64,000 bases of DNA from Hypanus sabinus (taxonomy: Eukaryota): NCBI RefSeq assembly GCF_030144855.1, contig NC_082712.1, forward strand, positions 96,286,001 through 96,350,000, written 5' to 3'. The first letter of the stretch is position 1. Every line of letters begins with the position of its first letter. The position numbers and the translations under genes are program-made. Below the pieces are notes generated by a model. It had not been told where the DNA came from. It made no database searches and worked only from the letters and a program-made list of their open reading frames with translations. Shown here one piece after another: positions 10,807-61,310 of the stretch.

Positions 10807-10920
10807 CAACTTCAATTTCATCATCTACACGTTCACAATAGGTCCCTTCATAGGGATCGGGGCAATCACATTCATCGTCATCTTCATCCCAGGTCCCTCC
10901 ATTCTGGCATGGATTTTTTT
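10807..10920 (-). CDS. EGF-like exon of MUC3/MUC12/MUC17-type membrane mucin (EKNPCQNGGTWDEDDDECDCPDPYEGTYCERVDDEIEV)
   Basis: Not in the ORF track. Acceptor tatttatacag| at 10921 and donor G|gtgagt at 10806; 114 nt, phase 1-1. The CQNGGTWD..CxC..YxG..CE motif is the first EGF-like module that follows the PTS region in MUC3/12/17. Confidence 0.85.
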
Positions 10921-17740: not shown

Positions 17741-18242
17741 TGAGTGTAAGTGATGCTTTTCAGGACTTTTGTCACTGTCCTGTGCTTGGACGCCCTCTCC
17801 CATCGATGAAGGCTACATTGTTTTTCTATTTCCTTGCTACCTAAGCGTTCCCGTTGGGTTGCAGTGTATCTCTGCCACATCTCCCAATTTTCTGTTCACT
17901 GAGATAAAATGAAAGGTGGTTTATCTGAACCACTAAATCTGTTTCTCATCTACAATTCTATCCGAGTCACAGATCATTTCTTGTATTCAATGTTTCATGT
18001 CAGATTTCCAAACATCAACATTTGCTTTTCAATACTGGCCAAAAACAAATAATTTAAAAAAGCACTTGAGTCTCCCTATGATTGGAGAGAGGAGCTTTTA
18101 ATCAAGGGGATCAACTCTTACCTCAGTTGGTGTGGTTTTTGGGTCTCCAGTTTCACTCCAGCTGCCTCTGCTGGTTTTGCATGAGAGGAGTCATTCTGAA
18201 TCAATGTCCAACATGACAGACAACTTTCCTTTATGATACCAT

Positions 18243-18745: not shown

Positions 18746-19409
18746 CAAAATCTGAGGCTGATACACAACTGAGGGACTATCATGGTGAGTGTTTCTGAGG
18801 ACTGAAGGGGCAACAAGTTCATGTGAACTGGACAAAACTGCCTGAAGAGGTAAATGTGGCTTTTGGACTATCTATGGTAAATTTTACATCTGTGTTAGAA
18901 GTAGAAGGGATTGGAAATTCAGTAACTGGGTAATGATGAGTATGCAATGGGAAGGGAAGGTCAAGTGAAGAGTGTCAGTAATGTAACAGCCTTTGCTTCA
19001 TGTGTGAGTGAGTAAGTATTTTACAGGCTTGACATTCACCTCACTGTGTCTCGATAGGTTATGAAATTAATTGCTCCATTGTGTTGGGGATTGTAACTAC
19101 TGGAGGAACCAAATGTAACCTACACTTGCTAGTTCTTCCACTGGTGGTGTAAGTGGACATCCTAGCCTTAGTCCAACACAAGGGACCTCTCTCCACATAT
19201 ATTTCATAAACATGAATTCTAAGTTCCTCTCTGGAAATTGGGAAATACTCTGCCATTGTGTAAAATCTGCCATTACAGTCTGATGCTCTTCTGAATCAAT
19301 GTGAATTATGAACTGTAAAATCAACTATACACAACTAAACAGAAAATAAATTTTATAATCAGATCACATTGTACAAGTTAAACAGTGTAACAGAGACCAA
19401 CTTTAATCA

Positions 19410-27300: not shown

Positions 27301-30300
27301 GACCCTATGGTCAGGGTGCTGGACCCTGTGGTCAGGGTGCTGGACCCTGTGGTCAGTGTGCTGGACCCTGTGGTCAGGGTGCTGGACCCTGTGGTCAGGG
27401 TGCTGGACCCTGTGGTCAGGGTGCTGGACTCTGTTGTCGATGTGTTGAACCCTATGGTCGGTGTGCTGGATTCTGGGTGCAGTGTGCTATACTCTGTGGT
27501 TGATGAGCTGGACTCTGTAGTTGGTGTGCTGGACTCTCTGGTCAATGTGCTGGACCCTGCAGTCGATGTGCTGGACAGCACATTTGATGTACTGGACTCT
27601 GTTGTCGATGTGTTGTACCCTATGGTCGGTATGCTGGACCCTGTGGTCAGGGTGCTGGACTCTGTGGTCGGTATGCTGGACCCTGTTGTCAGGGTGCTGG
27701 TCTCTGTTGTCAATGTGTTGGCCCCTGTAGTCCGTGTGCTGGACTCTGGGTGCAGTGTTCTACACTCTGTGGTTGATGTACTGGACCCTGTGGTTGATGT
27801 ACTGGATTCTGTAGTTGGTGTGCTGGATCCTGGGTGTGCTGTGCTGGACTCTGTGGTTTGCACACTGATCACTGTATTGGATGTGCTGGACTGTGCGGTC
27901 GGAGAGCTGGACTCTGTAGTTGATGTGCTGGACTCTGTGGTGAGTGTGCTGGACACTGAAGTAGATGTGCTGGACTGTGGGGTCAGAGAGCTGGACTCTG
28001 TGGTTGACGTACTGGATTCTGTAGTTGGTGTGCTGGAGCCTGTGGTCAGTGTGCTGGACACTGTGTTTTGCACACTGATCACTGTATTTGATGTGCTGGA
28101 CTGTGCGGTCGTAGAGCTGGACTCTGTAGTCGGTGTGCTGGACCCTGGGTGCGGTATACTGGACTCTGTGGTCATTGTGTTGGACCCTATGGTCGGTATG
28201 CTGGACACTGTGGTTGATGTGCTGGACTCTGTGGTCTGTGTGCTGGTCTCTGTTGTCGGTGAACTGAACTCTGTGGTCGTTGTGCTGGACTTTGTGGTCG
28301 ATGTACTGGACTGTATAGTCTGTGTGGTAGGTGTGCTGGACTGTGTGGCCGTAGAGCTGGACTCTGTGGTTGATGTACTGGATTCTGTAGTCGGTGTGCT
28401 GGACCCTGGGTGCGGTGTGCTGGACTCTGTTGTCGATGTGTTGGACCCTATGGTCGGTATGCTGGACCCTGTGGTTGGTGTGCTGGACTCTGTGGTCGGT
28501 GTGCTGGACCCTGTGGTTGGTGTGCTGGACTCTGTGGTTGGTGTGCTGGACCCTGTAGTTGGTGTGCTGGACCCTGTGGTTGGTGTGCTGGACTCTGTGG
28601 TCGGTGTGCTGGAGCCTGTGGTCAGTGTGCTGGTCTCTGTGGTCGATGTGTTGGCCCCTGTGGTCGGTGTGCTGGACTCTGGGTGCAGTGTGCTATACTC
28701 TGTGGTTGATGTGCTGGACCCTGTGGTTGATGTACTGGATTCTGTACTCAGTGTGCTGGACCCTGGGTGCAGTGTGCTGGAGCCTGTGTTCGATGAGCTG
28801 GACACTGTGGTCAGTGTGCTGGACTCTGTGGTTGGCATACTGATTACTGTCGTGTATGTGCTGGACAGAGCAGTCAGAGAGCTGGACTCTGTGGTCAGTG
28901 TGCTGGTCTCTGTTGTTGGTGAGCTGGACTCTGTGATCGATGTACTGGACTGTATAGTCTGTGTGGTGCCTGTGCTGGACTGCGCTGTGGCCGTGCTGGA
29001 CTCTGTGCTTCGCATACTGATTACGGCAGTGTATGTGCTGTACAGAGCGGTCGGAGAGATGGACTCTGTGACCGGTGCGTTGGACACTATGGTTGCTGAG
29101 CTGGACTCTGTGGATGGTGAGCTGGTCTTCGCGGTCGACGTGCCGTGCTCAGTGGTCACAGTGCTGGATTCTGTGTGGTCGGTCGGTGTGCTGGATTGTA
29201 TGGTCTCTGTGCTGGACTGTGTTTTCAGTGCACTGGTCTCTCTGGTCAGTACACTCAAATCGGTGGTCGGTGTGCTGGAACCTGGGTGCGGTGTGCTGGA
29301 CTCTGTGGTCAGTGTGCTGGACACTGTGGTTTGCACACTGATCACTGTATTTGATGTGCTGGACTGTGCGGTCGTAGAGATGGACTCTGTAGTTGGTGTG
29401 CTAGACTCTCTGGTCCATGTGCTGGACCCTGCAGTTGATGTGCTGGACAGCACATTTGGTGTGCTGGATTCTGTAGTCGGTGTGCTGGACCCTGGGTGCG
29501 GTGTACTGGAGCCTGTGGTCAGTGTGCTGGACTCTGTTGTCGATGTGTTGGCCCCTATGGTCGGTGTGCTGGACTCTGGGTGCAGTGTGCTATACTCTGT
29601 AGTCAATGAGCTGGACTCTGTAGTTGGTGTGCTGGACTCTCTGGTCAGTGTGCTGGACCCTGCAGTCGATGTGCTGGACAGCACATTTGATGTGCTGGAT
29701 TCTGTAGTCGGTGTACTGGACTCTGTGGTCATTGTGTTGGACCCTATGGTCGGTGTACTGGACTCTGTGGTTGGTGTGCTGGACTCTGTTGTTGATGTGT
29801 TGGACCCTATGGTCGGTATGCTGGACTCTGTGGTTGGTGTGCTGGACTCTGTGGTTGGTGTGCTGGAGCCTGTGGTCAGTGTGCTGGTCTCTGGGTGCAG
29901 TGTGCTATACTCTGTAGTCAATGAGCTGGACTCTGTAGTTGGTGTGCTGGACTCTCTGGTCAGTGTGCTGGACCCTGCAGTCGATGTGCTGGACAGCACA
30001 TTTGATGTACTGGACTCTGTTGTCGATGTGTTGGACCCTATGGTCGGTGTGCTGGACTCTGTGGTTGGTGTACTGGTCTGTGTGGTCGGTGTGCTGGACC
30101 CTGTGGTCAAGGTGCTGGACTCTGTGGTCGATGTGTTGGCCCCTGTGGTCGGTGTGCTGGACTCTGGGTGCAGTGTGCTATACTCTGTGGTTGATGTACT
30201 GGACCCTGTGGTTGATGTACTGGATTCTGTAGTTGGTGTGCTGGACCCTGGGTGTGGTGTGCTGGAGCCTGTGGTCAGTGTGCTGGACACTGTGGTTTGC

Positions 30301-33300
30301 ACACTGATCACTGTATTTGATGTGCTGGACTGTGCGGTCGGAGAGCTGGACTCTGTAGTTGGTGTGCTAGACTCTCTGGTCAATGTGCTGGACCCTGCAG
30401 TCGATGTGCTGGACAGCACATTTGATGTACTGGACTCTGTTGTCGATGTGTTGGACCCTATGGTCGGTATGCTGGATCCTGTGGTCAGGGTGCTGGACTC
30501 TGTGGTCGATGTGTTGGCCCCTGTGGTCCGTGTGCTGGACTCTGGGTGCAGTGTTCTATACTCTGTGGTTGATGTACTGGACCCTGGTGATGATGTACTG
30601 GATTCTGTAGTTGGTGTGCTGGACCCTGGGTGCGGTGTGCTGGACTCTGTGGTTTGCACACTGATCACTGTATTGGATGTGCTGGACTGTGCGGTCGTAG
30701 AGCTGGACTCTGTAGTCGGTGTGCTGGACAGCACACTTGATGTGCTGGATTCTGTAGTCGGTGTGCTGGACCCTGGGTGCGGTGTACTGGACTCTGTGGT
30801 CAGTGTGCTGGTCTCTGTGGTTGGTGTGTTGGACTCTGTGGTCAGTGTGCTGGTCTCTGTTGTCGGTGAACTGGACTCTGTGGTCATTGTGCTGGACTTT
30901 GTGGTCGATGTACTGGACTGTATAGTCTGTGTGGTAGGTGTGCTGGACCCTGTGGTCGATGAGCTGGACTCTGTGGTGAGTGTGCTGGACCCTGCAGTCG
31001 ATGTGCTGGATTCTGGGTGCAGTGTGCTATACTCTGTGGTTGATGAGCTGGACTCTGTAGTTGGTGTGCTGGACTCTCTGGTCAGTGTGCTGGACCCTGC
31101 AGTCAATGTGCTGGACAGCACATTTGATGTACTGGATTCTGCAGTCGGTGTGCTGGACCCTGGGTGCAGTGTGCTGGACTCTGTTGTCGATGTGTTGGCC
31201 CCTATGGTCCGTGTGCTGGACTCTGGGTGCAGTGTGCTATACTCTGTGGTTGATGTACTGGACCCTGTGGTTGATGTACTGGATTCTGTGGATGATGTAC
31301 TGGATTCTGTAGTTGGTGTGCTGGACCCTGGGTGTGGTGTGCTGGAGCCTGTGGTCAGTGTGCTGGACACTGTGGTTTGCACACTGATCACTATATTTGA
31401 TGTGCTGGACTGTGCGGTCGGAGAGCTGGACTCTGTAGTTGGTGTGCTAGACTCTCTGGTCAATGTGCTGGACCCTGCAGTCGATGTGCTGGACAGCACA
31501 TTTGATGTACTGGACTCTGTTGTCGATGTGTTGGACCCTATGGTCGGTATGCTGGATCCTGTGGTCAGGGTGCTGGACTCTGTGGTCGATGTGTTGGCCC
31601 CTGTGGTCCGTGTGCTGGACTCTGGGTGCAGTGTTCTATACTCTGTGGTTGATGTACTGGACCCTGGTGATGATGTACTGGATTCTGTAGTTGGTGTGCT
31701 GGACCCTGGGTGTGGTGTGCTGGACTCTGTGGTTGGTGTACTGGTCTGTGTGGTCGGTGTGCTGGACCCTGTGGTCAAGGTGCTGGACTCTGTGGTCGAT
31801 GTGTTGGCCCCTGTGGTCGGTGTGCTGGACTCTGGGTGCAGTGTGCTATACTCTGTGGTTGATGTACTGGACCCTGTGGTTGATGTACTGGATTCTGTAG
31901 TTGGTGTGCTGGACCCTGGGTGTGGTGTGCTGGAGCCTGTGGTCAGTGTGCTGGACACTGTGGTTTGCACACTGATCACTGTATTTGATGTGCTGGACTG
32001 TGCGGTCGGAGAGCTGGACTCTGTAGTTGGTGTGCTAGACTCTCTGGTCAATGTGCTGGACCCTGCAGTCGATGTGCTGGACAGCACATTTGATGTACTG
32101 GACTCTGTTGTCGATGTGTTGGACCCTATGGTCGGTATGCTGGATCCTGTGGTCAGGGTGCTGGACTCTGTGGTCGATGTGTTGGCCCCTGTGGTCCGTG
32201 TGCTGGACTCTGGGTGCAGTGTTCTATACTCTGTGGTTGATGTACTGGACCCTGGTGATGATGTACTGGATTCTGTAGTTGGTGTGCTGGACCCTGGGTG
32301 CGGTGTGCTGGACTCTGTGGTTTGCACACTGATCACTGTATTGGATGTGCTGGACTGTGCGGTCGTAGAGCTGGACTCTGTAGTCGGTGTGCTGGACAGC
32401 ACACTTGATGTGCTGGATTCTGTAGTCGGTGTGCTGGACCCTGGGTGCGGTGTACTGGACTCTGTGGTCAGTGTGCTGGTCTCTGTGGTTGGTGTGTTGG
32501 ACTCTGTGGTCAGTGTGCTGGTCTCTGTTGTCGGTGAACTGGACTCTGTGGTCATTGTGCTGGACTTTGTGGTCGATGTACTGGACTGTATAGTCTGTGT
32601 GGTAGGTGTGCTGGACCCTGTGGTCGATGAGCTGGACTCTGTGGTGAGTGTGCTGGACCCTGCAGTCGATGTGCTGGATTCTGGGTGCAGTGTGCTATAC
32701 TCTGTGGTTGATGAGCTGGACTCTGTAGTTGGTGTGCTGGACTCTCTGGTCAGTGTGCTGGACCCTGCAGTCAATGTGCTGGACAGCACATTTGATGTAC
32801 TGGATTCTGCAGTCGGTGTGCTGGACCCTGGGTGCAGTGTGCTGGACTCTGTTGTCGATGTGTTGGCCCCTATGGTCCGTGTGCTGGACTCTGGGTGCAG
32901 TGTGCTATACTCTGTGGTTGATGTACTGGACCCTGTGGTTGATGTACTGGATTCTGTGGATGATGTACTGGATTCTGTAGTTGGTGTGCTGGACCCTGGG
33001 TGTGGTGTGCTGGAGCCTGTGGTCAGTGTGCTGGACACTGTGGTTTGCACACTGATCACTATATTTGATGTGCTGGACTGTGCGGTCGGAGAGCTGGACT
33101 CTGTAGTTGGTGTGCTAGACTCTCTGGTCAATGTGCTGGACCCTGCAGTCGATGTGCTGGACAGCACATTTGATGTACTGGACTCTGTTGTCGATGTGTT
33201 GGACCCTATGGTCGGTATGCTGGATCCTGTGGTCAGGGTGCTGGACTCTGTGGTCGATGTGTTGGCCCCTGTGGTCCGTGTGCTGGACTCTGGGTGCAGT

Positions 33301-36300
33301 GTTCTATACTCTGTGGTTGATGTACTGGACCCTGGTGATGATGTACTGGATTCTGTAGTTGGTGTGCTGGACCCTGGGTGTGGTGTGCTGGACTCTGTGG
33401 TTGGTGTACTGGTCTGTGTGGTCGGTGTGCTGGACCCTGTGGTCAAGGTGCTGGACTCTGTGGTCGATGTGTTGGCCCCTGTGGTCGGTGTGCTGGACTC
33501 TGGGTGCAGTGTGCTATACTCTGTGGTTGATGTACTGGACCCTGTGGTTGATGTACTGGATTCTGTAGTTGGTGTGCTGGACCCTGGGTGTGGTGTGCTG
33601 GAGCCTGTGGTCAGTGTGCTGGACACTGTGGTTTGCACACTGATCACTGTATTTGATGTGCTGGACTGTGCGGTCGGAGAGCTGGACTCTGTAGTTGGTG
33701 TGCTAGACTCTCTGGTCAATGTGCTGGACCCTGCAGTCGATGTGCTGGACAGCACATTTGATGTACTGGACTCTGTTGTCGATGTGTTGGACCCTATGGT
33801 CGGTATGCTGGATCCTGTGGTCAGGGTGCTGGACTCTGTGGTCGATGTGTTGGCCCCTGTGGTCCGTGTGCTGGACTCTGGGTGCAGTGTTCTATACTCT
33901 GTGGTTGATGTACTGGACCCTGGTGATGATGTACTGGATTCTGTAGTTGGTGTGCTGGACCCTGGGTGCGGTGTGCTGGACTCTGTGGTTTGCACACTGA
34001 TCACTGTATTGGATGTGCTGGACTGTGCGGTCGTAGAGCTGGACTCTGTAGTCGGTGTGCTGGACCCTGGGTGCGGTGTACTGGACTCTGTGGTCAGTGT
34101 GCTGGTCTCTGTGGTTGGTGTGTTGGACTCTGTGGTCAGTGTGCTGGTCTCTGTTGTCGGTGAACTGGACTCTGTGGTCATTGTGCTGGACTTTGTGGTC
34201 GATGTACTGGACTGTATAGTCTGTGTGGTAGGTGTGCTGGACTGTGTGGTCGTAGAGCTGGACTCTGTGGTTGATGTACTGGATTCTGTAGTCGGTGTGC
34301 TGGACCCTGGGTGTGGTGTGCTGGAGCCTGTGGTCAGTGTGCTGGACTCTGTGGGTGGCACACTGATCACTGTATTCGATGTGCTGGACTGTGGGGTCGG
34401 AGAGCTGGACTCTGTGGATGGTGAGCTGGTCTTCGCGGTTGACGTGCCGTGCTCAGTGGTCACAGTGCTGCATTCTGTGTGGTCGGTCGGTGTGCTGGAT
34501 TGTATGGTCTCTGTGCTGGACTGTGTTTTCAGTGCACTGGTCTCTCTGGTCAGTACACTCAAATCGGTGGTCGGTGTGCTGGACCCTGTGTGTGGTGTGC
34601 TGGAGCCTGCGGTCGCTGTGCTGGACTTTGTTGTTGGTGAGCTGGATTCTGTGGTCGATGAGCTGGACCCTGTGGTCGATGAGCTGGACTCTGTGGTGAG
34701 TGTGCTGGACCCTGCAGTCGATGTGCTGGATTCTGGGTGCAGTGTGCTATACTCTGTGGTTGATGAGCTGGACTCTGTAGTTGGTGTGCTGGACTCTCTG
34801 GTCAGTGTGCTGGACCCTGCAGTCAATGTGCTGGACAGCACATTTGATGTACTGGATTCTGCAGTCGGTGTGCTGGACCCTGGGTGCAGTGTGCTGGACT
34901 CTGTTGTCGATGTGTTGGCCCCTATGGTCCGTGTGCTGGACTCTGGGTGCAGTGCGCTATACTCTGTGGTTGATGTACTGGACCCTGTGGTTGATGTACT
35001 GGATTCTGTGGATGATGTACTGGATTCTGTAGTTGGTGTGCTGGACCCTGGGTGTGGTGTGCTGGAGCCTGTGGTCAGTGTGCTGGACACTGTGGTTTGC
35101 ACACTGATCACTATATTTGATGTGCTGGACTGTGCGGTCGGAGAGCTGGACTCTGTAGTTGGTGTGCTAGACTCTCTGGTCAGTGTGCTGGACCCTGCAG
35201 TCGATGTGCTGGACAGCACATTTGATGTGCTGGATTCTGCAGTTGCTGTGCTGGACCCTGGGTGCGGTGTGCTGGACTCCGTTGTCGATGTGTTGAAATC
35301 TATGGTCGGTATGCTGGACCCTGTGGTCAGTGTGCTGGTCTTTGTTGTTGGTGAGCTGGATTCTGTGGTCGATGAGCTGGACCCTATGGTCGTTATGCTG
35401 GACCCTGTGGTTGACGTACTGGATTCTGTAGTCGGTGTGCTGGACCCTGGGTGCGGTGTTCTGAACTCTGTGGTCATTGTGTTGGACCCTATGGTCGGTA
35501 TGCTGGACTCTGTGGTTGATGTGCTGGACTCTGTGGTCGTTGTGCTGGACTGTATAGTCTGTGTGGTGGGTGTGCTGCACTGTGTGGTCATAGAGCTGGA
35601 TTCTGTAGTTGGTGTGCTGGACCCTGGGTGCGGTGAGCTGGATTCTGTAGTTGGTGTGCTGGACCCTGGGTGCGGTGTGCTGGATTCTGTAGTCGGTGTG
35701 CTGGACCCTGGGTGTGGTGAGCTGGATTCTGTAGTTGGTGTGCTGGATCCTGGGTGTGGTGTGCTGGACTCTGTGGTTTGGACACTGATCACTGTATTCG
35801 ATGTGCTGGACTGTGCGGTCATAGGGCTGGACTCTGTGGTGAGTGTGCTGGACACTGAAGTAGATGTGCTGGACTGTGGGGTCAGAGAGCTGGACTGTGT
35901 GGTCAGTGTGCTGGTCTGTGTTGTTGGTGAGCTGGATTCTGTGGTCGATGAGCTAGACACTGTATTCGGAGTGCTGGAGTCTGTGGTTGGTGTGCTGGAC
36001 CCTGCAGTCGGTGTGCTAAACAGTGCATTTGATGTGCTGGATTCTGTAATCGGTGAGCTGGACCGTGTGATCAGTGAGCTGGATGCTGCAGTCAGTGTGT
36101 TGGACTCTTTTGTCTGTGTGTTGGAGTTTGTGGTTGGTGTGCTGGACTCTGTGGTTGGCATACTGATTACTGTTGTGTATGTGCTGGACAGAGCGGTCGA
36201 TGTGCTGGAGCCTGTGGTCAGTGTGCTGGACTCTCTGGTTGGTGAGCTCAAATCAGTGGTTGGTGCGCTGGACTCTGTGGTGGTCATTGTGCTGGATTCT

Positions 36301-36550
36301 GCAGTTGTTATGCTGTACTGTGCAGTTGATGTGCTAGATTGAGTGATTGGTGTGCTGGATTGTGTGTTTGGTGTGCTGGACCCTGTGGTCACTGAGCTGG
36401 ATTCTGTGGTCACTGAGCTGGATTCTGTGGTCAGAGTGCTGGATTCTGTGGTCACTGGGCTGGATTCTGTGGTCGGAGTGCTGGAGTCTGTGGTTGATGT
36501 TCTGGACTCTGTGGTTGATGTTCTGGACTCTGTGGTCGGTGTGCTGGGCC
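21320..36550 (-). CDS. Mucin PTS exon C (15,231 nt, 5077 codons; 7-aa TTESSTP-type repeats with recurrent N-T-S sequons)
   Basis: Track ORF 21309..36623 is open for 15 kb. Acceptor ...attgaccacag|G at 36551-36553 and donor CCAG|gtaatt at 21319. Phase 1-1. Confidence 0.85.
24680..25950. repeat. 588-bp (196-aa) higher-order tandem repeat within exon C, about 2 copies
   Basis: Identical shadow ORFs at 25049 and 25637. Confidence 0.8.
30050..34050. repeat. 1668-bp (556-aa) higher-order tandem repeat within exon C, about 2.4 copies
   Basis: Identical shadow ORFs recur at 30383/32051/33719, 31061/32729 and 31463/33131 (period 1668). Confidence 0.85.
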
Positions 36551-36556
36551 CTGTGG

Positions 36557-36985
36557 TCAATAGAAACATAGAAAACTTACAGCACAATACAGGCCCTTCA
36601 GCCCACAAAGTTGCACCAAACATGTCCCTACCTTAGAAATTACTGGGCTTATGCATAGCCCTCTAATTTTCTGCACCATGTACCTATCCAAAAGTCTCTT
36701 AAAACACCCTATCATATCCGCCTCCACCATCATTGCCAGCAGCCCATTCCGCACACTCACCACTCTCTGAGTAAAAAACTTGCCCCTGGCATCTCCTCTG
36801 TACCTACTCCCCAGCACCTTAAGTGTGTGTCCTCTTGTGGAAACCATTTCAACCCTGGGAAAAAAGCCTCTGACTATCCACACAATCAATGCCTCTCATC
36901 ATCTTGTACACCTCTATCAGGTCACCTCTCATCCTTCATCACTCCAAGGAGAAAAGGCCGAGTTCACTCAAACATTTTTCATAAG
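36557..36985 (-). mobile_element. CR1 LINE 3' fragment inserted in mucin repeats, copy 1
   Basis: Encodes the CR1 ORF2 C-terminus (FFPRVE..TRGH.LKV...FFTQRVV) plus a 3'UTR gggctgaagggcctgt ending in ttctatgtttcta. Confidence 0.85.
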
Positions 36986-48100: not shown

Positions 48101-51100
48101 GTGTACTGGTCTCTGTGGTGGATGTGCTGGTCGGTGTACTGGTCACAGTGGTGGATGTGCTGGTCGGTGTACTGGTCTCTGTGGTCAATGTGCTGGTCAG
48201 TGTACTGGTCACTGTGGTCGATGTGGTCGGTGTACTGGTCTCTGTGGTGGATGTGCTAGTCAGTGTACTGGTCACTGTGGTCGATGTGGTCGGTGTACTG
48301 ATCTCTGTGGTCGATGTGCCGGTCGGTGTACTGGTCACTGTGGTCGATGTGCTGGTCGGTGTACTGGTCACTGTGGTCGATGTGCTGGTCGGTGTACTGG
48401 TCACTGTGGTCGATGTGGTCGGTGTACTGGTCTCTGTGGTTGATGTGCTGGTCAGTGTACTGGTCACTGTGGTCGATGTGGTCGGTGTACTGGTCTCTGT
48501 GGTTGATGTACTGGTCGGTGTACTGGTCAATGTGGTTGATGTGGTTGGTATACAGGTCTCTGTGGTCGATGTGCTGGTCGGTGTACTGGTCTCTGTGGTC
48601 GATGTGCTGGTCAGTGTACTGGTCACTGTGGTCGGTGTACTGGTCTCTGTGTTGGATGTGCTTGTTGGTGTACTGGTCTCTGTGGTCGATGTGCTGGTCA
48701 GTGTACAGGTCACTGTGGTGGATGTACTGGTCGGTGTACTGGTCACTGTGGTCGGTGTACTGGTCTCTGTGGTCGATGTGCTGATTGGTGTACTGGTCAC
48801 TGTGGTCGATGTACTGGTCGGTGTACTGGTCACTGTGGTCGATGTACTGGTCGGTGTACTGGTCTCTGTGGTCGATGTGCTGGTCGGTGTACTGGTCTCT
48901 GTGGTCGATGTACTGGTCGGTGTACTGGTCATTCTGATCGTTGTGCTGGTTGGTGTACTGGTCTCTGTGGTCAATGTGGACGGTGTACTGGTCACTGTGG
49001 ACGATGTGGTCGGTGTACTGGTCTCTGTGGTCAGTGTACTGGTCTCTGTGCTCAATGTGCTGGTTGGTGTACTTTTCTCTGTGTTCGATGTACTAGTCGG
49101 TGTAATGGTTACTGTGGTAGGTGTTGTTGTCAGTGTACCGGTTACTATGGTCTGTGTGTTAGTGAGTGTACTGGTCACTATGCTAAATGCACTGGTTGGT
49201 GTACTGGTCTCTGTGGTCGATGTGCTGGTCTGTCTACTGGTCTCTGTGGTCGATGTGCTGGTTGGTGTACTGGTCACTGTGGTGGATGTGCTGGTCGGTG
49301 TACTGGTCTCTGTGGTTGGTGTACTGGTCGGTGTACTGGTCTCTGTGGTCGATGTGCTGGTCGGTGTACTGGTCTCTGTGGTCAATGTGCTGGTCAGTGT
49401 ACTGGTCACTGTGGTGGATGTGCTGGTTGGTGTACTGGTCTCTGTGGTCGATGTGCTGGTTGGTGTACTAGTCTCTATGGTCGATGTACTGGTCGGTGTA
49501 CTGGTCACTGTGGTCGATGTGCTGGTCGGTGTACTGGTCACTGTGGTCGATGAGCTGGTCGGTGTACTGGTCACTGTGGTCGATGTGCTGGTTGGTGTAC
49601 TGGTCACTGTGGTCGATGTGGTCGTTGTACTGGTCTCTATGGTCGATGTGGTCGGTGTACTGGTTGGTGTACTGGTCTCTGTGGTGGATGTGCTGGTCAG
49701 TATACTGGTCTCTGTGGTGGATGTGCTGGTCGGTGTACTGGTCACTGTGGTTAATGTGCTGGTCGGTGTACTGGTCTCTGCGGTCGATGTACTGGTCGGT
49801 GTACTGGTCTCTGTGGTGGATGTGCTGGTCGGTGTACTGGTCACTGTGGTCGATGTGGTCGTTGTACTGGTCTCTATGGTCGATGTGGTCGGTGTACTGG
49901 TCTCTGTGGTTGGTGTGCTGGTCGTTGTACTGGTCTCTATGGTCGATGTGGTCGGTGTACTGGTCACTGTGGTTGATGTGCTGGTCGGTGTACTGGTCTC
50001 TGTGGTCGATGTGCTGGTCAGTGTACTGGTCTTTGTGGTCGATGTGCTGGTCAGTGTACTGGTCTTTGTGGTTGATGTGCTGGTCGGTGTACTGGTCACT
50101 GTGGTCGGTGTGGTCGGTGTACTGGTCTCTGTGGTCGATGTGCTGGTCTGTGTACTGGTCACTGTGGTTGATGTGCTGGTCAGTGTACTGGTCTCTATGG
50201 TCGATGTGGTCGGTGTACTGGTCACTGTGGTTGATGTGCTGGTCGGTGTACTGATCTTTGTGGTTGATGTGCTGGTCAGTGTACTGGTCACTGTGGTCGG
50301 TGTGGTCGGTGTACTGGTCTCTGTGGTCGATGTGGTCGGTGTACTGGTCTCTGTTGTTGATGTACTGGTCGGTGTAATGGTCTCTGTGGTCGATGTGCTG
50401 GTTGGTGTACTGGTCACTGTGGTTGATGTGCTGGTCGGTGTACTGGTCACGGTGGAGGATGTGGTCAGTGTACTGGTCTCTGTGGTCGTTCTGCCGGTTG
50501 GTGTACTGGTCTCTGTGGTCGATGTACTGGTCTCTGTGGTTGATGTGCTGGTCAGTGTACTGGTCACTGTGGTCGATGTGCTGGTCGGTGTACTGGTCTC
50601 TGTGGTCGATGTGCTGGTCAGTGTACTGGTCTCTGTGGTCGATGTGCTGGTCGGTGTACTGGTCTCTGTGGTTGACGTGCTGGTCAGTGTACTGGTCACT
50701 GTGGTCGGTGTACTGGTCTCTGTGGTCGATGTGGTCGGTGTACTGGTCTCTGTGGTGGATGTGCTGGTCAGTGTACTGGTCTCTGTGGTCATTGAGCTGG
50801 TCGGTGTACTGGTCACTGTGGTCGATGTGCTGGTCGTTGTACTGGTCTCTGTGGTTGGTGTGCTGGTCGGTGTACTGATCTCTGTGGTCAATGTGCTGGT
50901 CGGTGTACTGGTCTCTGTGGTTGGTGTGCTGGTCGGTGTACTGGTCTCTGTGGTCGATGTGCTGGTCGGTGTACTGGTCTCTGTGGTCGATGTGCTGGTC
51001 GGTGTACTGGTCACTGTGGTTGGTGTGCTGGTCGGTGTACTGGTCTCTGTGGTTGGTGTGCTGGTCAGTGTACTGGTCTCTGTGGTCGATGTGCTGGTCG

Positions 51101-52525
51101 GTGTACTGGTCTCTGTGGTCGATGTGCTGGTCGGTGTACTGGTCACTGTGGTGGATGTGCTGGTCGGTGTACTGATCTCTGTGGTCGGTGTGCTGGTCGG
51201 TGTACTGGTCTCTGTGGTCGATGTGCTGGTCGGTGTACTGGTCACTGTGGTGGATGTGCTGGTTGGTGTACTGGTCTCTGTGGTTGATGTGCTGGTCGGT
51301 GTACTGGTCACTGTGGTCGATGTGGTCGGTGTACTGGTCTCTGTGTTGGATGTGCTGGTCGGTGTACTGGTCTCTGTGGTCGGTGTCCTGGTCAGTGTAC
51401 TGGCTGATGTTATGGTTGGTGTACTTGTTACAGCGGTGAATGTAGTGCTCGTTGTTATCGTCCCTGTAGTCGTTGTGGTTTCTATGCTGGTGTCTGTAGT
51501 TGTGGTGGTTTTGCTGGTTGTCACACAGACCCATACGCACTCCTCTGTAGTTGATTCACTCGTCAGTGTGCTGGTCCCTCTGGTTGAAGTGCTGGACTCT
51601 GTGGTTTGCACACTGATCACTGTATTTGTTGTGCTGGACTGTGTGGTCATAGGGCTGGACTCTGTAGTTGATGTGCTAGACTCAGTGGTGAGTGTGCTGG
51701 ACACTGAAGTAGATGTGCTGGACTGTGGGGTCAGAGAGCTGGACTGTGTGGTCAGTGTCCTGGTCTGTGTTGTTGGTGAGCTGGATTCTGTGGTCGATGA
51801 GCTAGACACTGTATTCGGAGTGCTGGACTCTGTGGTTGGTGTGCTGGACCCTGCAGTCGGTGTGCTAAACAGTGCATCTGATGTGCTGGATTCTGTAATC
51901 GGTGAGCTGGACCGTGTGATCAGTGAGCTGGATGCTGCAGTCAGTGTGCTGGACTCTTTGGTCTGTGTGTTGGAGCTTGTGGTTGGTGTGCTGGAGTCTG
52001 GGTGTGGTGTGCTGGAGCCTGTGGTCAGTGTGCTGGACTCTGTGGTTGGCATACTGATTACTGTCGTGTATGTGCTGGACAGAGCGGTCGATGTGCTGGA
52101 GCCTGTGGTCAGTGTGCTGGACTCTCTGGTCGGTGAGCTCAAATCAGTGGTTGGTGTGCTGGACTCTGTGGTTGGTGCGCTTGACTGTATTGTTGGTGCG
52201 CTGGACTCTGTGGTGGTCATTGTGCTGGATTCTGCAGTTGTTATGCTGTCCTGTGCAGTTGATGTGCTAGATTGAGTGATTGGTGTGCTGGATTGTGTGT
52301 TTGGTGTGCTGGACCCTGTGGTCACTGAGCTGGATTCTGTGGTCAGAGTGCTGGATTCTGTGGTCAGAGTGCTGGATTCTGTGGTCGGAGAGCTGGATTC
52401 TGTGGTTGGAGTGCTGGAGTCTGTGGTCGATGTTCTGGACTCTGTGGTTGATGTTCTGGACTCTGTGGTCGGAGTGCTGGACATCTTGATTGATGTATTT
52501 GATTCTGTGGTCAGTTTGCTGGGCC
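42101..52525 (-). CDS. Mucin PTS exon B (10,425 nt, 3475 codons; TESS-type start, then [12 protein letters not shown] repeats); chimeric exon
   Basis: Track ORF 41985..52598 is open. Acceptor ttttctatgtttctattgaccacag|G at 52526-52528 and donor TCAG|gtaaac at 42100. Length divisible by 3, phase 1-1. Confidence 0.8.
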
Positions 52526-52531
52526 CTGTGG

Positions 52532-52960
52532 TCAATAGAAACATAGAAAACTTACAGCACAATACAGGCCCTTCAGCCCACAAAGTTGCACCAAACATGT
52601 CCCTACCTTAGAAATTACTGGGCTTATGCATAGCCCTCTAATTTTCTGCACCATGTACCTATCCAAAAGTCTCTTAAAAGTCCCTATCATATCCGCCTCC
52701 GCCATCATTGCCAGCAGCCCATTCCGCACACTCACCACTCTCTGAGTAAAAAACTTGCCCCTGGCATCTCCTCTGTACCTACTCCCCAGCACCTTAAGCC
52801 TGTGTCCTCTTGTGGCAACAATTTCAACCCTGGGAAAAAAGCCTCTGACTATCCACACAATCAATGCCTCTCATCATCTTGTACACCTCTATCAGGTCAC
52901 CTCTCATCCTCCATCACTCCAAAGAGAAAAGGCCGAGTTCACTCAAACATTTTTCATAAG
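52532..52960 (-). mobile_element. CR1 LINE 3' fragment inserted in mucin repeats, copy 2
   Basis: Near-identical to 36557-36985, with the same junctions. Confidence 0.85.
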
Positions 52961-55113
52961 ACTGGACCTTGTGCTAAGTGTGCTGGACTCTGTGGTTGGT
53001 GAGCTAGACTCTGTAGTCGATGTGCTGGACCCTGTGTTCGATGTGCTGGACCATGTGGTCGATGAGCTGGACCATGTGGTCGATGAGCTGGACAATGTGG
53101 CCAATGGGATGGACCCTGTGGTTGATGGGATGGACCCTGTGGTCAGTGCGCTGGACCCTGTGGTCAGTGCGCTGGACTCTGTGGTCAGTGAGCTGGACTC
53201 TGTGGTCAATGTGTTGTTCAGTGAACTGGTCTCTGAGGATTGTGTACTGGTCACTGTTGTTGATGTGCCGGTGGAGATGAGTTTGGTTGGTGTACTGATT
53301 ATTGTTGATGGGTTGGTCACCGTGGGAGACACACTGGCAGCTGAACTGGACTCAGAGCCTAGTGTAGTGCACAATGTGCTGAAGAATGTGGTGGGTGCAC
53401 TGGCCGGTGTGGAGGACTGTGTGATTGGAATACAGATCATCGTACAGGTCACTGGACTCATGCTGGTCACTGTACTCGACACTGTGGTTACAGTGCTAAG
53501 TGGTATGGTGGGATATGTGCACAAAGTGGTTGATATAATGGATGCTGTGGTGGGTATGGGGGTCACAGTGGTTGATGTGCTGGTCGGTGTACTGGTCTCT
53601 GTGGTCGATGTGCTGGTCGGTGTACTGGTCTCTGTGGTTGATGTACTGGTCGGTGTACTGGTCAATGTGGTCGGTGTACTGGTCAGTGTACTGGTCTCTG
53701 TGGTCGATGTGCTGGTCGATGTACTGGTCTCTGTGGTCTGTGTACTGGTCTCTGTGGTCGGTGTACTGGTCAGTGTACTGGTCTCTGTGGTCGATGTGCT
53801 GGTCGGTGTACTGGTCAGTGTACTGGTCTCTGTGGTCGGTGTTGTGGTTGTTGTACTGTTCAATGTGGTTAGTGTACTGGTTGGTGTACTGGTCACTGCA
53901 GTCTGTGTACTGGTCACTGTGGTCAGTGTACTGGTTGGTGTACTGGTCACTGTGGTCAGTGTACTGGTTGCTGTACTGGTCACTGCAGTCGGTGTACTGG
54001 TCATTGTGGTCAATGTGCTGGTCGGTGTACTGGTCACTGTGGTCAGTGTACTGGTTGGTGTACTGGTCACTGTAGTTGGTGTACTGGTCATTGTGGTCAA
54101 TGTGCTGGTCTGTGTACTGGTCACTGTGGTCGGTGTACTGGTCAGTGTACTGGTCTCTGTGGTCGATGTGCTGGTCGATGTACTGGTCTCTGTGGTTGGT
54201 GTACTGGTCAGTGTACTGGTCTCTGTGGTCGATGTGCTGGTCGGTGTACTGGTCTCTGTGGTCGGTGTACTGGTCAGTGTACTGGTCTCTGTGGTCGCTG
54301 TGCTGGTCAGTGTACTGGTCACTATGGTCGATGTTGTGGTTGTTGTACTGTTCAATGTGGTTAGTGTACTGGTTGGTTTACTGGTCACTGCAGTCTGTGT
54401 ACTGGTCACTGTGGTCAGTGTACTGGTTGGTGTACTAGTCACTGCAGTCTGTGTACTGGTCATTGTGGTCAATGTGCTGGTCTGTGTACTGGTCACTGTG
54501 GGGTCTGTGTACTGGTCACTGTGGTCAACCTGCTAGTCGGTGTACTGGTCATTGTGTTCAATGTGCTGGTCTGTGTACTGGTCAATGTGCTGGTCTGTGT
54601 ACTGGTCACTGTGGTCAACCTGCTAGTCGGTGTACTGGTCATTGTGGTCAACCTGCTAGTCGGTGTACTGGTCATTGTGGTCAATGTGCTGGTCTGTGTA
54701 CTGGTCTCTGTGGGGTCTGTGTACTGGTCACTGTGGTCAACCTGCTAGTCGGTGTACTGGTCATTGTGGTCAATGTGCTGGTCTGTGTACTGGTCTCTGT
54801 GGGGTCTGTGTACTGGTCACTGTGGTCAACCTGCTAGTTGGTGTACTGGTCATTGGGGTAAATGTACTGGTTAGTAATTTGGGATTATGCAACATTATGA
54901 AACCAGTGAAGAGGAGAGGAGGAACAAAGTGAGGGCACTTCTGAATAGAGAGCTTCAGCTTGGTTATGGGCTGAATTAGTCTGGGTTGGTTAATGGGGAG
55001 ACAGTGGGCTTCATTAGGCAGAGTACTGGGGTCTATGGGTCTGAGAATATCAACAGTGAAAGGATGCAGTTATGAAAAGAGGAGAGTGAGCCCATTGGAT
55101 GGAGGTGGGTATT
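52961..55113 (-). pseudogene. Decayed 5' portion of the ancestral mucin exon (pseudo-exon), copy 2
   Basis: Paralog of 36986-39010 with the same acceptor (55114), the same early TAA and frameshifted units at 54500-54830. ORF 52943..54496 ends in the CR1 insert. Confidence 0.7.
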
Positions 55114-58100
55114 CTGTATAAATACACAAACATTTTAAAGATTAGCTTTATTTGTCAAATGTACATTGAAACATAAGTGAAATGCGTTACTAATGGGAGC
55201 AGCCTGCTTGTGTCGCCACGCTCTGTTGAGAATGTAGTGTTGGTCAGGATGAACTACAGTCTGCAAATCAGTGAAATTGAATAAATAAAGGACAGTGGAT
55301 AGACACACCAATTCTCTTTGCTCTTGCCATGTGTTTGAAAGAGTTTGGAGATGGCCAATTTGTGAGATTTTGTGAACTCTGAACGAATTCTTGCTCTGGG
55401 ATATTTTATTCAGAGTAATTGAATGTGGACACAAGGACTTTCAGCTGATGATCTGCTGAACCTGAGCCCATACTCAGATGCGTAGCTATTTATTATGTAA
55501 AGTGTCAGGCTTGCCAGAGAAGTAATCTGTAATCTCGTTGGATTCAGCGTCTGGGTCACCTGTTGTACCTGGTTTGAACCACTTAGAGTAGAAAGGAACA
55601 AAGGCACGATGCCAGGGAGCAGAGACCATATTACATTGCTGGTTGTCGCCCTGGACCAAAGCCAGTATGAAGGTGACTCAGGTAGTGTCAGGTGACCTTT
55701 AGTCAATTTGAGGGAGATGGATTAGTTGAACTGATAAGCAACATCAGAAGAGTCAGGAGCTTCAAATACGAGGCAGCGATAACTTTCCAGCAAACAGAGA
55801 ACGATCAACACGGATGAGGAGGACCCCACAGACACGTGGATATCGGGACTCTGAGGAATGCCTGGTCAGCGGAGACTGCTTTCCCGAGTAATACATTTTC
55901 TCTTCATTGATTGCTCATGGAGGGTCAGGGAATCCTAATGAGTATGCGCACAGTTAATTAGTTTGTGAACCGGCATGCTTTTTAGTTGAGGCAATAACGG
56001 TTACTTATCAGTAGATACAGATTCTCTCTGTTTTCTCTGATTATTATTACAAAAATATAGATTCTTATGACAATGGCATGCCCACAACGCTGGCTGGTGG
56101 CATACTGGCATCAGCGCTGGATTTCAGGGCGAGACGTCCCAAGTTTGAATCCAGCCGGCTCCCGTTGAGAGCTAATCTCTTAAAAAAAACTCATCCAGCA
56201 GAAGGCAATGGCAAACAACTGCTGTAACTTGCTTAGTATGTGATTTTCCAATATGTCAGAGTGGCATGGGAGGAAATTGCCCACTAGCTGGCAATAATTC
56301 CGGATACAACCTACCTACCTATCCCACAACTCACTAACCTTAACAGCAGAGGAGGTTATAAATCAATAAATAAACAGGGTGGGGGTGGTTGCAGAAAGAG
56401 CATGCAGTAATGAAGGGAGATTTTAATCTTCATGCAGATTGGATTAATCATTTTTCTATGGGTTGCTATCAGATCAAATTCATTGTACATTTAGGACATT
56501 TTCCTAGACCAGCCAGAGAATAAGCTCAAGAGATTCGGCATATCAAAGTTCAAAGATTCAAAGTACAGTACATCTATTATCAGAGCATATTTGCAGTATA
56601 CACCCTGAGATTCACCTTCCCACAGACTAGGAATGTTTAGTTTAGTTCAGTTCAGTTCAATTTAGCACTGTATCATTTGTTGACTGCAGGCCGCAGAGTT
56701 AGTCTGCCCTGATCAAATTTGCACGGAAATAGCAATAAAAAAGGATTAACCAGAACCCAGAAACACATCATAACATAAACGACAGTCCAATACATAAATT
56801 GCATCAATTAAACTTTGCCCAAGATTCAAAATTCTAGCAAGATCAAGCGGGGTGGGGGGGGGGGGTGGAAGAGGAAGAGAGAGAGAGAGAGAGAGACACT
56901 GGTCATTTGCAGTCACCTTCCCCTGGGATCTGAGAGCTACGAGCAAGAGTGAGAGAAACAGAGCAGTCACACGCAGACACCCTTCTCTGACAGTGGAGAG
57001 AGACCAGTCAAATGCAGACAGGCGATGCTGAACACCCGCTCGCCTTCTGCTCTCGTCCTCATCAATTTCAGTTTTGCTTATCACTTTAATCGACAAGAAA
57101 TGGGATCCATCATGGGTTCACACCTTATCTCCAGGCTTCTTGGCCTCCTGGCTGCACACTTCGCTCAAAACTTCACCGAACTCCCTCAGAGATAGCAAAG
57201 TGACAGATCACCCAATCAGGTCAAAGAAACAGCAGCAAAATGTGTCAGTGTCTGATTGAGGGCACAACTCAGGATGGTGATAGAGCATTCTCCATTGCCT
57301 GGATGAATACATATCCGATAACACTGAAGAAGCTGGATATTATCCAGGATAAAACAGGCCATTTCATCAGCAACACATTCACCACACATAATATTTGTGG
57401 CCATCCCCACTGTTGCAAAATGCATTGTAGATACCTTCTGATCATCATCAACAACATTTCTCAAAACCATGGTGACATATGCAGCAAGTGTGGAGTAATA
57501 TCGCTACTTGTAGATTTACTGTGTAACGCACGCCTTTCTCCGTCGTCGTATCGACCTCCTGGAAATCCCCACACAACAATGAGGTGAGAGTTGCTTCAAC
57601 AGATGGATTGTAGAAATTGAAAACAACGGCCCAGTGGTACCACCTCAAGAACAGTTGCAGACAGGAAATGACTGGTGTTCTCACCAATGACACCCGCAAC
57701 CCAGAAAATAAGAATTGAACAATAATTTGGAAAGTGGAGCTAAATTACAAAGTGCACATATTTGTCCTTCTGTTCGAGGGATCAATTAAGCAAATTTGGC
57801 CTAAAGGATCCTTACTGCAATTTGGAATCAATTGGCATAGGATGAAAACACACCACTGGTTGGTGTCAATTTGTAACTGACACTTGGCTGCACTGTCAGG
57901 AACTTCAGGGCAAGAAAAAGCCAAGACAAAAGACTCCATTGTCAGGGAATGATCAAAGACCACATCTCTTTGGAAACACCGATGAGCAGTGAATTCACAT
58001 CTTAAGATATTGTATTACAATGATAAACTGTTTTCTATTACAAGCTTAAATGATGTTCTGCAGACAAACCTTTGGTCCCAGTCTTGAGCCTCAACTACTC

Positions 58101-58210
58101 GCTCCACATTGAATCTCCACGTCTTAGTACCAAATCATTCTAACAACCTGCAGTAGATCTCTGCCAGGCCTCAGTTATCAGGTGAAAGGAATAACATAAA
58201 AGTAGTTTAC

Positions 58211-59071
58211 CTGAACTGGACACTGTAGTTGCTGAACTGACCTCCGTGGTGATCTTCTTGGTTGTACTGATCATTGATGTGCTGGTCGGCTCATTGGACA
58301 GTGTGGGTTTGGTCGATGTAGCAGTCAGCTTGCTTGACAGTGTGGTTGATGTGGTGGCTTGAGATCTGGACTCTGTGGCAATCTTGATTGTACTGGTCCT
58401 TGTTGATGGGTTGGTCACCGTGGGAGACACACTGGCAGCTGAACTGGACTCAGAGCCTAGTGTAGTGCACAATGTGCTGAAGAATGTGGTGGGTGCACTG
58501 GCCGGTGTGGAGGACTGTGTGATTGGAATACAGATCATCGTACAGGTCACTGGACTCATGCTGGTCACTGTGGTAGATGTACTGGTCGGTGGACTGGTCA
58601 CTGTGGTCGATGTGCTGGTCGGTGTACTGGTCACTGTGGTCGGTGTACTGGTCACTGTGGTTGATGTACTGGTCGGTGTACTGGTCACTGTGGTCGATGT
58701 GCTGGTCGGTGTACTGGTCTCTGTGGTCGATGTGGTCGGTGTACTGGTCTCTGTGGTCGATGTGCTGGTCAGTGTACTGGCCGATGTTATGGTTGGTGTA
58801 CTTGTTACAGTGGTGAATGTAGTGCTTGTTGTTATGGTCCCTGTAGTCGTTGTGGTTTCTATGCTGGTGTCTGTAGTTGTGGTGGTTTTGTTGGTTGTCA
58901 CACAGACCCAAACACACTCCTCTGTGGTTGATTCACTCGTCAGTGTGCTGGTCCCTCTGGTTGAAGTGCTGGACTCTACACCTGGTGTTTGTGTTGAAGT
59001 AATGCCAGCAATGTACGTCTTGTACTTTGTTTGGGTTTTGCTCAGTTGAGAGTCAGAAAATCCTCCAAGAA
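58211..59071 (-). CDS. Mucin PTS exon A (287 codons; VLGGFSDSQLSKTQTKYKTY...[10 protein letters not shown]...VTCTMICIP...TTVSSS)
   Basis: Acceptor ctttattcaag| at 59072 and donor TCAG|gtaaac at 58210. 861 nt, phase 1-1, open and Thr/Ser-rich; overlaps track ORF 58140..58901. Confidence 0.8.
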
Positions 59072-61243: not shown

Positions 61244-61310
61244 CTAAGATTGTAGAAAAATAGAGACAGCAGTAATATATAGTGTTTATCCTGCATATTC
61301 CTCTTTTCAT
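61244..61310 (-). CDS. Mucin gene, first coding exon (signal peptide MKRGICRINTIYYCCLYFSTIL)
   Basis: ATG at 61310 in an AAA-ATG context. The exon has a ttccttcag acceptor at 61336-61338 and a G|gtaagt donor at 61243. 67 nt gives phase 1. Basic N-terminus plus hydrophobic core, continuing in frame as VLGG-FSDSQ in the next exon. Confidence 0.8.

What the first reader, a model, noticed from the sequence alone, without database searches (positions are those of the whole stretch)
51580..51610. Chimeric exon born at an in-frame 12-bp microhomology junction of an intragenic duplication
Seen: exon B starts like exon C (52525-51601 matches 36550-35773). It then switches at gtgctggactct (51589-51600) to exon A sequence ([26 protein letters not shown], matching 58977 downward). 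The same 12-mer is at 35761-35772 and 58966-58977. Inference: unequal crossover between two ESST codon motifs duplicated exon A 3' part, intron and exon C 5' part without breaking the frame. The near-identical introns imply a recent event.
Basis: partly seen in the sequence, partly recalled or inferred. Interest (0 to 1): 0.75.

Follow-up and report, generated by a model that had tools for sequence, protein, structure and literature searches.

The report
Tandem internal duplication in stingray mucin gene
A giant membrane-mucin gene of a stingray carries a real head-to-tail internal duplication whose join lies in frame inside a 12-base repeat motif and creates a hybrid 10-kb exon, which is a clean example of the usual way mucin genes grow and not a new kind of event.

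Summary
On the minus strand, exon B (52534-42101) follows exon C up to 51601. It follows exon A from 51588 onward. The switch lies inside the 12-mer at 51589-51600, which also sits at both parental sites (58966-58977 and 35761-35772).

The two units are 58977-51601 and 51600-35773. Their unique intron parts are 98.7% identical. Both carry the same decayed exon piece, the same LINE fragment and identical splice sites. Exon B is open for 3,477 in-frame codons, and every exon of the gene is phase 1.

- The 12-mer is not unique. It is the core of the 21-bp ESST repeat and occurs 102 times in the window, but only once in exon A.
- Homology at the parental sites is 12 bp and no more. This is a microhomology-mediated duplication, not recombination between long homologous tracts.
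- The copies differ by one 8.75-kb block of the 33-bp array. Exon A probably lost this block after the duplication.
- "Recent" means about 1.3% divergence, and gene conversion may hide a greater age.

Nothing shows that exon B is spliced into mRNA, and no read data could be examined. The gene resembles mucin-3A-like and mucin-17-like genes of the red stingray. This is an ordinary class of event, well resolved here.

The parts
61244..61310 (-). Exon 1: ATG, a hydrophobic signal-like peptide, and a donor TTAG|GTAAGT in phase 1
   Evidence: Sequence read. The signal-peptide role is inferred.
58211..59071 (-). Exon A: unique 5' part, one ESST motif, first cysteine island (EECVWVCV), a short 33-bp array (58780-58561), second cysteine island, unique 3' part, and a donor CAG|GTAAAC in phase 1
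58966..58977 (-). Parental breakpoint site 1: the only copy of the 12-mer in exon A
51601..58977 (-). Duplication unit 1 (7,377 bp): 3' part of exon A, intron, decayed exon piece, LINE fragment, and the ESST 5' part of exon B
54872..58210 (-). Unique intron sequence, copy 1. It is 98.7% identical to 38770-42100.
52946..54871 (-). Decayed older exon piece, copy 1: a 33-bp-type array, a cysteine island (53288-53462) and 21-bp repeats. A 529-codon frame is still open until the LINE fragment.
52535..52945 (-). LINE-tail fragment, copy 1. It is 97.8% identical to 36560-36970, and its pyrimidine-rich end plus CAG forms the acceptor of exon B.
42101..52534 (-). Exon B, the hybrid exon: 3,477 full in-frame codons plus split phase-1 codons at both ends, with no stop
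51589..51600 (-). Novel junction: the 12-mer inside which exon B switches from C-like to A-like sequence. Glu337 of the open frame is the E of ESST.
42451..51403 (-). 33-bp (11-residue) array of exon B, about 262 units. Exon A holds only its first ~35 bp and last ~208 bp.
35773..51600 (-). Duplication unit 2 (15,828 bp): the A-like part of exon B, intron, decayed exon piece, LINE fragment, and the ESST 5' part of exon C
38770..42100 (-). Unique intron sequence, copy 2
36971..38769 (-). Decayed older exon piece, copy 2. It carries more frame breaks than copy 1.
36560..36970 (-). LINE-tail fragment, copy 2, with the same acceptor sequence for exon C
21320..36559 (-). Exon C: a 21-bp (ESSTPTT-type) array of about 700 units with a donor CCAG|GTAATT in phase 1
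35761..35772 (-). Parental breakpoint site 2: the copy of the 12-mer in exon C at which homology with exon B ends
10807..10920 (-). EGF-like exon, phase 1 at both ends. It is 80-91% identical to the EGF exons of Hemitrygon akajei mucin-17-like and related proteins.

Best explanation
This is a real germline tandem duplication inside a MUC3/12/17-like membrane-mucin gene.

The ancestral gene had exon A, an intron that already held a decayed exon piece and a LINE fragment, and exon C. A break or stalled replication fork in the ESST array of exon C, at the equivalent of 35772, was joined to the single ESST motif of exon A, at the equivalent of 58977. The join used 12 bp of identity.

The segment between the two sites was thereby copied head to tail. 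Both motifs encode E-S-S-T in the same codon phase, so the new join is in frame.

The copied acceptor (the LINE tail) and the copied donor are unchanged. The result is therefore a third giant phase-1/phase-1 exon: the first ~310 residues of C fused to the cysteine island, 33-bp array and 3' end of A.

Afterwards, or in the same complex event, one 8.75-kb block of the 33-bp array went missing from exon A. Repeat units were also gained or lost in the ESST part.

Shown: the structure, the junction, the open frame and the splice-site identity. Inferred: the enzymatic mechanism, the order of events and the use of exon B in mRNA.
For: - The three-way alignment places the switch inside the 12-mer.
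- The two units are collinear over intron, decayed exon piece, LINE fragment and exon parts. Identities are 98.7%, 90%, 97.8% and 96-99.7% respectively.
- The unique 5' part of exon A and the remainder of exon C are single-copy. This is what a tandem duplication predicts.
- Donors (CAG|GTAAAC) and acceptors are identical in both copies, and all exons are phase 1.
- Exon B has no stop in 3,477 codons, while its other two frames have 251 and 44 stops.
- The parental sites share exactly 12 bp, with unrelated sequence upstream.
- The window has no assembly gap.
- The four cysteine-island copies group as (A,B) and (piece 1, piece 2), as expected if the large duplication is the latest step.
Against: - No reads, read depth, second individual or second species could be examined.
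- No public protein or transcript-derived peptide contains the junction.
- The two units are unequal in length (7.4 against 15.8 kb), so a second event or a complex event is required.
- Divergence is uneven: 0.3% at the exon 3' end, 1.3% in the intron, and about 4% next to the junction. A single simple event followed by clock-like decay does not explain this.
- The absence of stops in exon B is expected by chance with probability 0.46 at this age, so it is no evidence of function.
Confidence: 0.8

Rival explanations
1. Assembly artefact. The two units are one locus, or two haplotypes of one locus, wrongly laid in tandem by the assembler inside a highly repetitive mucin gene.
For: The region is made of long arrays in which assemblers do fail. 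The copies differ by about 1.3% and by array length, as diverged haplotypes might. There is no independent sequence with the junction.
Against: The window has no gap or N. The junction joins non-repetitive A-type sequence (the cysteine island) to C-type repeats through only 12 shared bases, far too few for a false overlap. The join is in frame, and the unique ends of A and C are single-copy, exactly as a true tandem duplication predicts. Haplotypes would share their upstream context, but A and B do not.
Confidence: 0.08
2. Classical non-allelic homologous recombination, that is, unequal crossover between long homologous tracts, produced the duplication.
For: Mucin repeat arrays are known to change by unequal crossing over and slippage (PMC13345508, introduction). 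The breakpoints lie in a shared motif.
Against: Homology between the parental sites is 12 bp only. Identity is 23-31% upstream and 47-60% downstream. From general knowledge, homologous recombination in vertebrates needs on the order of hundreds of bases. Longer shared tracts do exist in the gene, namely the 175-bp cysteine island and the 33-bp arrays, but they were not the sites used.
Confidence: 0.15
3. The duplication is much older than 1.3% divergence suggests, and gene conversion keeps the copies alike.
For: A 175-bp cysteine-island segment is 95-99% identical in four places with sharp borders and unrelated flanks. Divergence along the units is patchy, from 0 to 3.8% per 300 bp. One copy carries a 5-base cluster also seen in a paralogue of another stingray record.
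Against: Identity is high over the whole 3.5 kb of unique intron with only 2-3 small indels. No paralogue or outgroup DNA was available for a formal conversion test.
Confidence: 0.2
4. Exon B is not a working exon. Transcripts end in the decayed exon piece or the LINE fragment, or they skip B, so the duplication is neutral baggage in an intron or in a dying gene.
For: The older acceptor and a 529-codon open frame lie upstream of the LINE fragment, which ends in a stop (earlier notes s1-236310 and s1-236342). The named model XP_072903794.1 joins an A-type exon end directly to the EGF exon. There is no transcript evidence. The open frame is uninformative at this age.
Against: The acceptor and donor are intact and identical to those of exons C and A. 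All indels in the coding repeats are whole units. Automatic gene models regularly drop giant repeat exons.
Confidence: 0.4

Closest known systems
MUC3A / MUC12 / MUC17-type transmembrane mucins. Nearest named records: mucin-3A-like XP_072903794.1 and mucin-17-like of Hemitrygon akajei.
   Same: Giant Ser/Thr-rich tandem-repeat coding exons are followed by an EGF-like exon. The 3' end of exon A/B is 87% identical in protein to the first exon of XP_072903794.1. The cysteine island is 92-96% identical to the start of the mucin-17-like record. Both records carry a SEA domain.
   Different: The repeat domain here is split over three giant phase-1 exons (0.86, 10.4 and 15.2 kb), not carried on one central exon. 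The SEA and membrane-anchor exons lie outside the window and were not seen.
Length and structural variation of mucin repeat exons by slippage, unequal exchange, partial gene duplication and gene conversion (human mucin pangenome, PMC13345508)
   Same: The process is the same: repeat-rich mucin genes that gain and lose kilobases, with partial duplications and conversion between copies.
   Different: Here the duplicated unit spans an intron. It therefore adds a whole new exon, not merely more units to an existing one, and its breakpoint can be read to the base.
Intragenic tandem duplications with exon-level consequences, such as the haptoglobin Hp2 allele or disease-causing partial tandem duplications (from general knowledge, not checked in a paper here)
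   Same: The segment is copied head to tail within one gene, the frame is preserved and the protein is lengthened. Junctions often show short microhomology.
   Different: In the classic cases the breakpoints usually lie in introns, so whole exons are repeated. Here both breakpoints lie in coding repeats, so the middle exon is a hybrid of two different exons.

Membership tests
MUC3/12/17-type transmembrane mucin | Very large Pro/Thr/Ser tandem-repeat domain encoded by giant exon(s) | tested here: met
   A 21-bp array of about 709 copies and a 33-bp array of about 262 copies, open for 5,107 and 3,540 codons
MUC3/12/17-type transmembrane mucin | EGF-like domain following the repeat domain | tested here: inconclusive
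   Exon 10920-10807 gives Pfam EGF_2 and EGF at E about 0.01, below the curated cut-offs. It is 80-91% identical to the EGF exons of H. akajei mucin-17-like and related proteins.
MUC3/12/17-type transmembrane mucin | SEA domain, second EGF, membrane anchor and cytoplasmic tail | not testable with these tools
   These exons would lie beyond the low-coordinate end of the window, where 1-10100 is occupied by retroelements. The nearest named relatives carry PF01390 SEA.
Tandem intragenic duplication | Two collinear direct copies lying head to tail, with single-copy sequence on both outer sides | tested here: met
   Units 58977-51601 and 51600-35773. The 5' part of exon A and the rest of exon C are single-copy.
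Tandem intragenic duplication | One novel junction joining the end of the unit to its start | tested here: met
   The switch from C-like to A-like sequence lies inside 51589-51600.
Tandem intragenic duplication | Support from single molecules and normal read depth | not testable with these tools
   No read data are available. No public peptide contains the junction.
Microhomology-mediated rearrangement (end joining or replication template switch) | Short perfect identity at both parental sites with no extended homology around it | tested here: met
   Exactly 12 bp are shared. Identity is 23-31% upstream and 60% then 47% downstream.
Non-allelic homologous recombination | Extended high-identity tracts (hundreds of bases) at the two parental sites | tested here: not met
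   Longer shared tracts exist elsewhere in the gene but are not at the breakpoints.

The most novel reading that the evidence does not exclude
The duplication copied a retrotransposon-derived splice acceptor along with its exon start. It thereby created a third giant, frame-symmetric mucin exon that is really used. If so, this ray can build mucins of different lengths and repeat types by including or skipping 10-15-kb cassette exons, and the number of units may vary between individuals.
Probability: 0.2. Interest if true: 0.45.

Novelty: new member of a known kind. Interest (0 to 1): 0.25.

Why it matters
This is a base-resolved example of how a mucin gene gains a whole extra exon and not just more repeat units. 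The breakpoint, the reading frame, the splice sites and the later reshaping of the arrays are all readable.

It is useful for annotating cartilaginous-fish mucins, because the nearest public gene models skip these exons. It also illustrates microhomology-mediated exon birth. It does not change what is known about mucin evolution.

Tried and rejected
- **Junction peptides:** protein searches with the junction peptide (152 residues) and with a 510-residue piece scored over the junction found nothing. No independent sequence supports or contradicts the junction.
- **Exon A search:** an exhaustive representative search with exon A found only the H. akajei mucin-3A-like record and an unrelated Pro/Thr-rich protein.
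- **Orthologue DNA:** DNA of the H. akajei locus could not be fetched because the file is too large. The event could therefore not be dated by comparison.
- **Pfam:** a scan of candidate exon peptides gave only a sub-threshold EGF match, and nothing for the LINE-fragment frame.
- **Selection test:** a simulation asked whether the absence of stops in exon B shows selection. It does not (P = 0.46 under neutrality).
- **The 94% figure:** the first whole-unit BLAST figure of 94% is misleading, because it is pulled down by the repetitive decayed exon piece. Unique intron sequence is 98.7% identical.
- **Array growth in B:** the idea that exon B's long 33-bp array grew after the duplication is less likely. 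Windows of 198 bp inside the array have a best partner at a median of only 93% identity. It is not excluded.
- **Earlier notes:** a word search of the scan's earlier notes for related mucin findings was blank.

Full report
**What the window holds**

From about 61.3 kb down to 10.8 kb, the minus strand carries one very large gene built mainly of Ser/Thr-rich tandem repeats. Tandem Repeats Finder reports a 21-bp array at 21587-36558 (about 709 copies) and a 33-bp array at 42869-51403 (about 262 copies), plus smaller related arrays. Two stop-free frames of 5,107 and 3,540 codons cover these arrays. The window has no N.

Reading the boundaries directly gives this model, with every exon in phase 1:

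| Exon | Coordinates (minus strand) | Content |
|---|---|---|
| 1 | 61310-61244 | ATG and a hydrophobic leader |
| A | 59071-58211 | see below |
| B | 52534-42101 | the hybrid exon |
| C | 36559-21320 | 21-bp ESST array |
| EGF-like | 10920-10807 | EGF-like domain |

**Gene identity**

An exhaustive protein search with exon A found mucin-3A-like XP_072903794.1 of the red stingray Hemitrygon akajei. Its first exon is 87% identical to the 3' ends of exons A and B. In that model this exon is spliced straight to an EGF exon, followed by SEA, EGF and a membrane anchor.

Related records are all short automatic models that begin just after the repeats. They include mucin-17-like and further mucin-3A-like proteins from the same chromosome of that species, and from a manta ray, a skate and sharks.

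The EGF exon of the window is 80-91% identical to theirs. In Pfam it reaches only E about 0.01. The SEA and anchor exons are outside the window. I therefore call the gene MUC3/12/17-like, with the SEA feature untested. This agrees with earlier notes s1-236341 and s1-236310.

**Checking the observation**

The 12-mer is at the three stated positions. In the three-way alignment, exon B is identical to exon C and unrelated to exon A up to the 12-mer. After the 12-mer, B is identical to A and unlike C. With the register fixed by the motif:

| Segment | B-C identity | A-B identity | A-C identity |
|---|---|---|---|
| 30 bp upstream | 0.90 | 0.23 | 0.23 |
| 30 bp downstream | 0.60 | 1.00 | 0.60 |

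The crossover point therefore lies inside 51589-51600.

The ESST motif is read as Glu-Ser-Ser-Thr in all three exons, and the frame across the junction stays open. The 12-mer is the core of the 21-bp repeat and occurs 102 times in the window: 93 times in exon C and once in exon A.

**Extent of the duplication**

Self-comparison and segment-by-segment global alignment show two collinear units, 58977-51601 (7,377 bp) and 51600-35773 (15,828 bp). Each unit contains the same parts in the same order:

| Part of the unit | Identity between copies | Notes |
|---|---|---|
| First cysteine island | 95.9% | 8 mismatches in 197 bp |
| 33-bp array | not comparable | lengths differ by 8.75 kb |
| Second cysteine island and unique exon 3' end | 99.7% | over 350 bp |
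| Unique intron sequence | 98.7% | 47 mismatches in 3,515 bp, 2-3 small indels |
| Decayed repeat region with its own cysteine island | 90% | many indels |
| LINE-tail fragment (411 bp) | 97.8% | |
| First 0.8-0.9 kb of the ESST array | 96.1% | indels of 21, 42, 42 and 42 bp |

The unique 5' part of exon A has no second copy. This is the signature of a single tandem duplication whose novel joint is the C-to-A switch in exon B.

The LINE fragment and the decayed piece are in both units, so they predate the duplication. The acceptor sequences of B and C and the donor sequences of A and B are identical.

**Mechanism**

The parental sites share exactly 12 bp. Upstream of the motif they are unrelated (23-31% identity). 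Downstream they show only the loose resemblance of Ser/Thr codons.

From general knowledge, that is far below what homologous recombination needs. It is typical of microhomology-mediated joining or replication template switching. Longer shared tracts exist in the gene but were not the sites used. The in-frame outcome follows automatically from pairing two identically phased codon motifs.

**The length difference between the units**

Exon A's short 33-bp array equals the first ~35 bp plus the last ~208 bp of exon B's array, at about 99% identity. A stretch of about 35 bp fits both ends. The units therefore differ by one 8.75-kb block whose edges lie in repeat units.

Inside exon B's array, 198-bp windows have a best partner at a median of only 93% identity, and only 12% reach 97%. 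That is far more diverged than the 1.3% separating the two units.

It follows that the long array most probably existed before the duplication. Exon A then lost the block afterwards, or in the same complex event through a second template switch. If so, the net gain to the protein is about 570 residues, not 3,478. Growth in B is not excluded, because arrays may mutate faster than unique sequence.

**Age**

Unique intron divergence is 1.3%, and it is patchy, from 0 to 3.8% per 300 bp. The coding parts beside the junction are about three times more diverged than the intron (Fisher P = 0.008 and 9e-6). The exon 3' end is almost identical between copies.

A 175-bp cysteine-island segment is present four times at 95-99% identity, with sharp borders. 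One copy carries a 5-base cluster that matches the variant seen in XP_072903794.1. These patterns point to gene conversion within the gene family, so 1.3% is a lower bound on the age.

With a slow cartilaginous-fish substitution rate (my own knowledge, not tested), 1.3% would mean millions of years. This is recent in evolutionary terms, but not a fresh mutation.

**Function**

Nothing here shows that exon B is expressed. The absence of stops has probability 0.46 under neutral decay at this age.

An older acceptor and an open frame ending in the LINE fragment lie upstream of both B and C (notes s1-236342 and s1-236310). Because all exons are phase 1, skipping B or C, or both, keeps the frame. 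The H. akajei model that joins an A-type exon end directly to EGF shows such a join is at least predicted there.

**Artefact?**

I consider an assembly artefact unlikely, for three reasons:
- There is no gap in the window.
- The join links non-repetitive sequence to repeats through only 12 bases and is in frame.
- The outer flanks are single-copy.

Only reads can settle it. Two peptide searches for the junction in public data were blank.

**Verdict**

It belongs to a well-known class: mucin genes are known to change by slippage, unequal exchange, partial duplication and conversion (PMC13345508). It is a new instance of a known kind and of modest interest.

Noticed in passing
window 21600-36559 (for example 30795-31068 against 32463-32736): The 21-bp array of exon C contains very young higher-order repeats. 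60% of its 198-bp windows have a partner at 98.7% identity or more, most often 1,668 bp away, and also 588, 4,356 and 4,575 bp away. This array is still expanding in large blocks, unlike the 33-bp array of exon B (median best partner 93%).
   Followed up: partly
window 58386-58560, 53288-53462, 42276-42450, 37366-37540: A 175-bp segment encoding a cysteine-bearing island ([14 protein letters not shown]...) occurs four times at 95-99% identity, with sharp borders and unrelated flanks. The copy at 37366-37540 has a 5-base cluster that matches the variant in H. akajei XP_072903794.1. This suggests gene conversion among modules or paralogues.
   Followed up: partly
window 58561-58780 against 42451-51403: The short 33-bp array of exon A equals the first ~35 bp plus the last ~208 bp of exon B's array (about 99% identity). 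The two copies therefore differ by a single 8.75-kb block with breakpoints inside repeat units.
   Followed up: yes
window 61244, 58211, 42101, 21320, 10807 (donors) and 59071, 52534, 36559, 10920 (acceptors): Every exon boundary of the gene is phase 1. The giant exons are therefore frame-symmetric cassettes, and skipping any of them keeps the frame. The H. akajei model joins an A-type exon end directly to the EGF exon.
   Followed up: partly
window 51404-52534 against 35773-36559 and 58781-58977: The coding sequence next to the junction is about 4% diverged between copies. That is three times the intron value of 1.3% (P = 0.008 and 9e-6), whereas the exon 3' end differs at 1 base in 350.
   Followed up: partly
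window 52946-54532: The decayed exon piece upstream of exon B still has a 529-codon open frame. It reads its cysteine island in the correct frame and runs into a stop only inside the LINE fragment. The matching piece upstream of exon C is more broken (304 codons). H. akajei mucin-17-like has the same layout without an interruption.
   Followed up: partly
window 1-10100: Retroelements fill the low-coordinate end of the window: LTR-retrotransposon-like polyprotein frames at about 1200-3900, a LINE-like frame with reverse-transcriptase-like sequence at about 5450-10075 (both on the minus strand), and a 22-bp tandem repeat at 4952-5331.
   Followed up: no
window 18066-18248, 18509-18690, 18409-18507, 19261-19358: Short dispersed repeats lie in the intron downstream of exon C. 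One direct pair is 97.8% identical and one inverted pair is 94% identical. Nearby frames resemble the same LINE-tail family as the fragment that precedes exons B and C.
   Followed up: no
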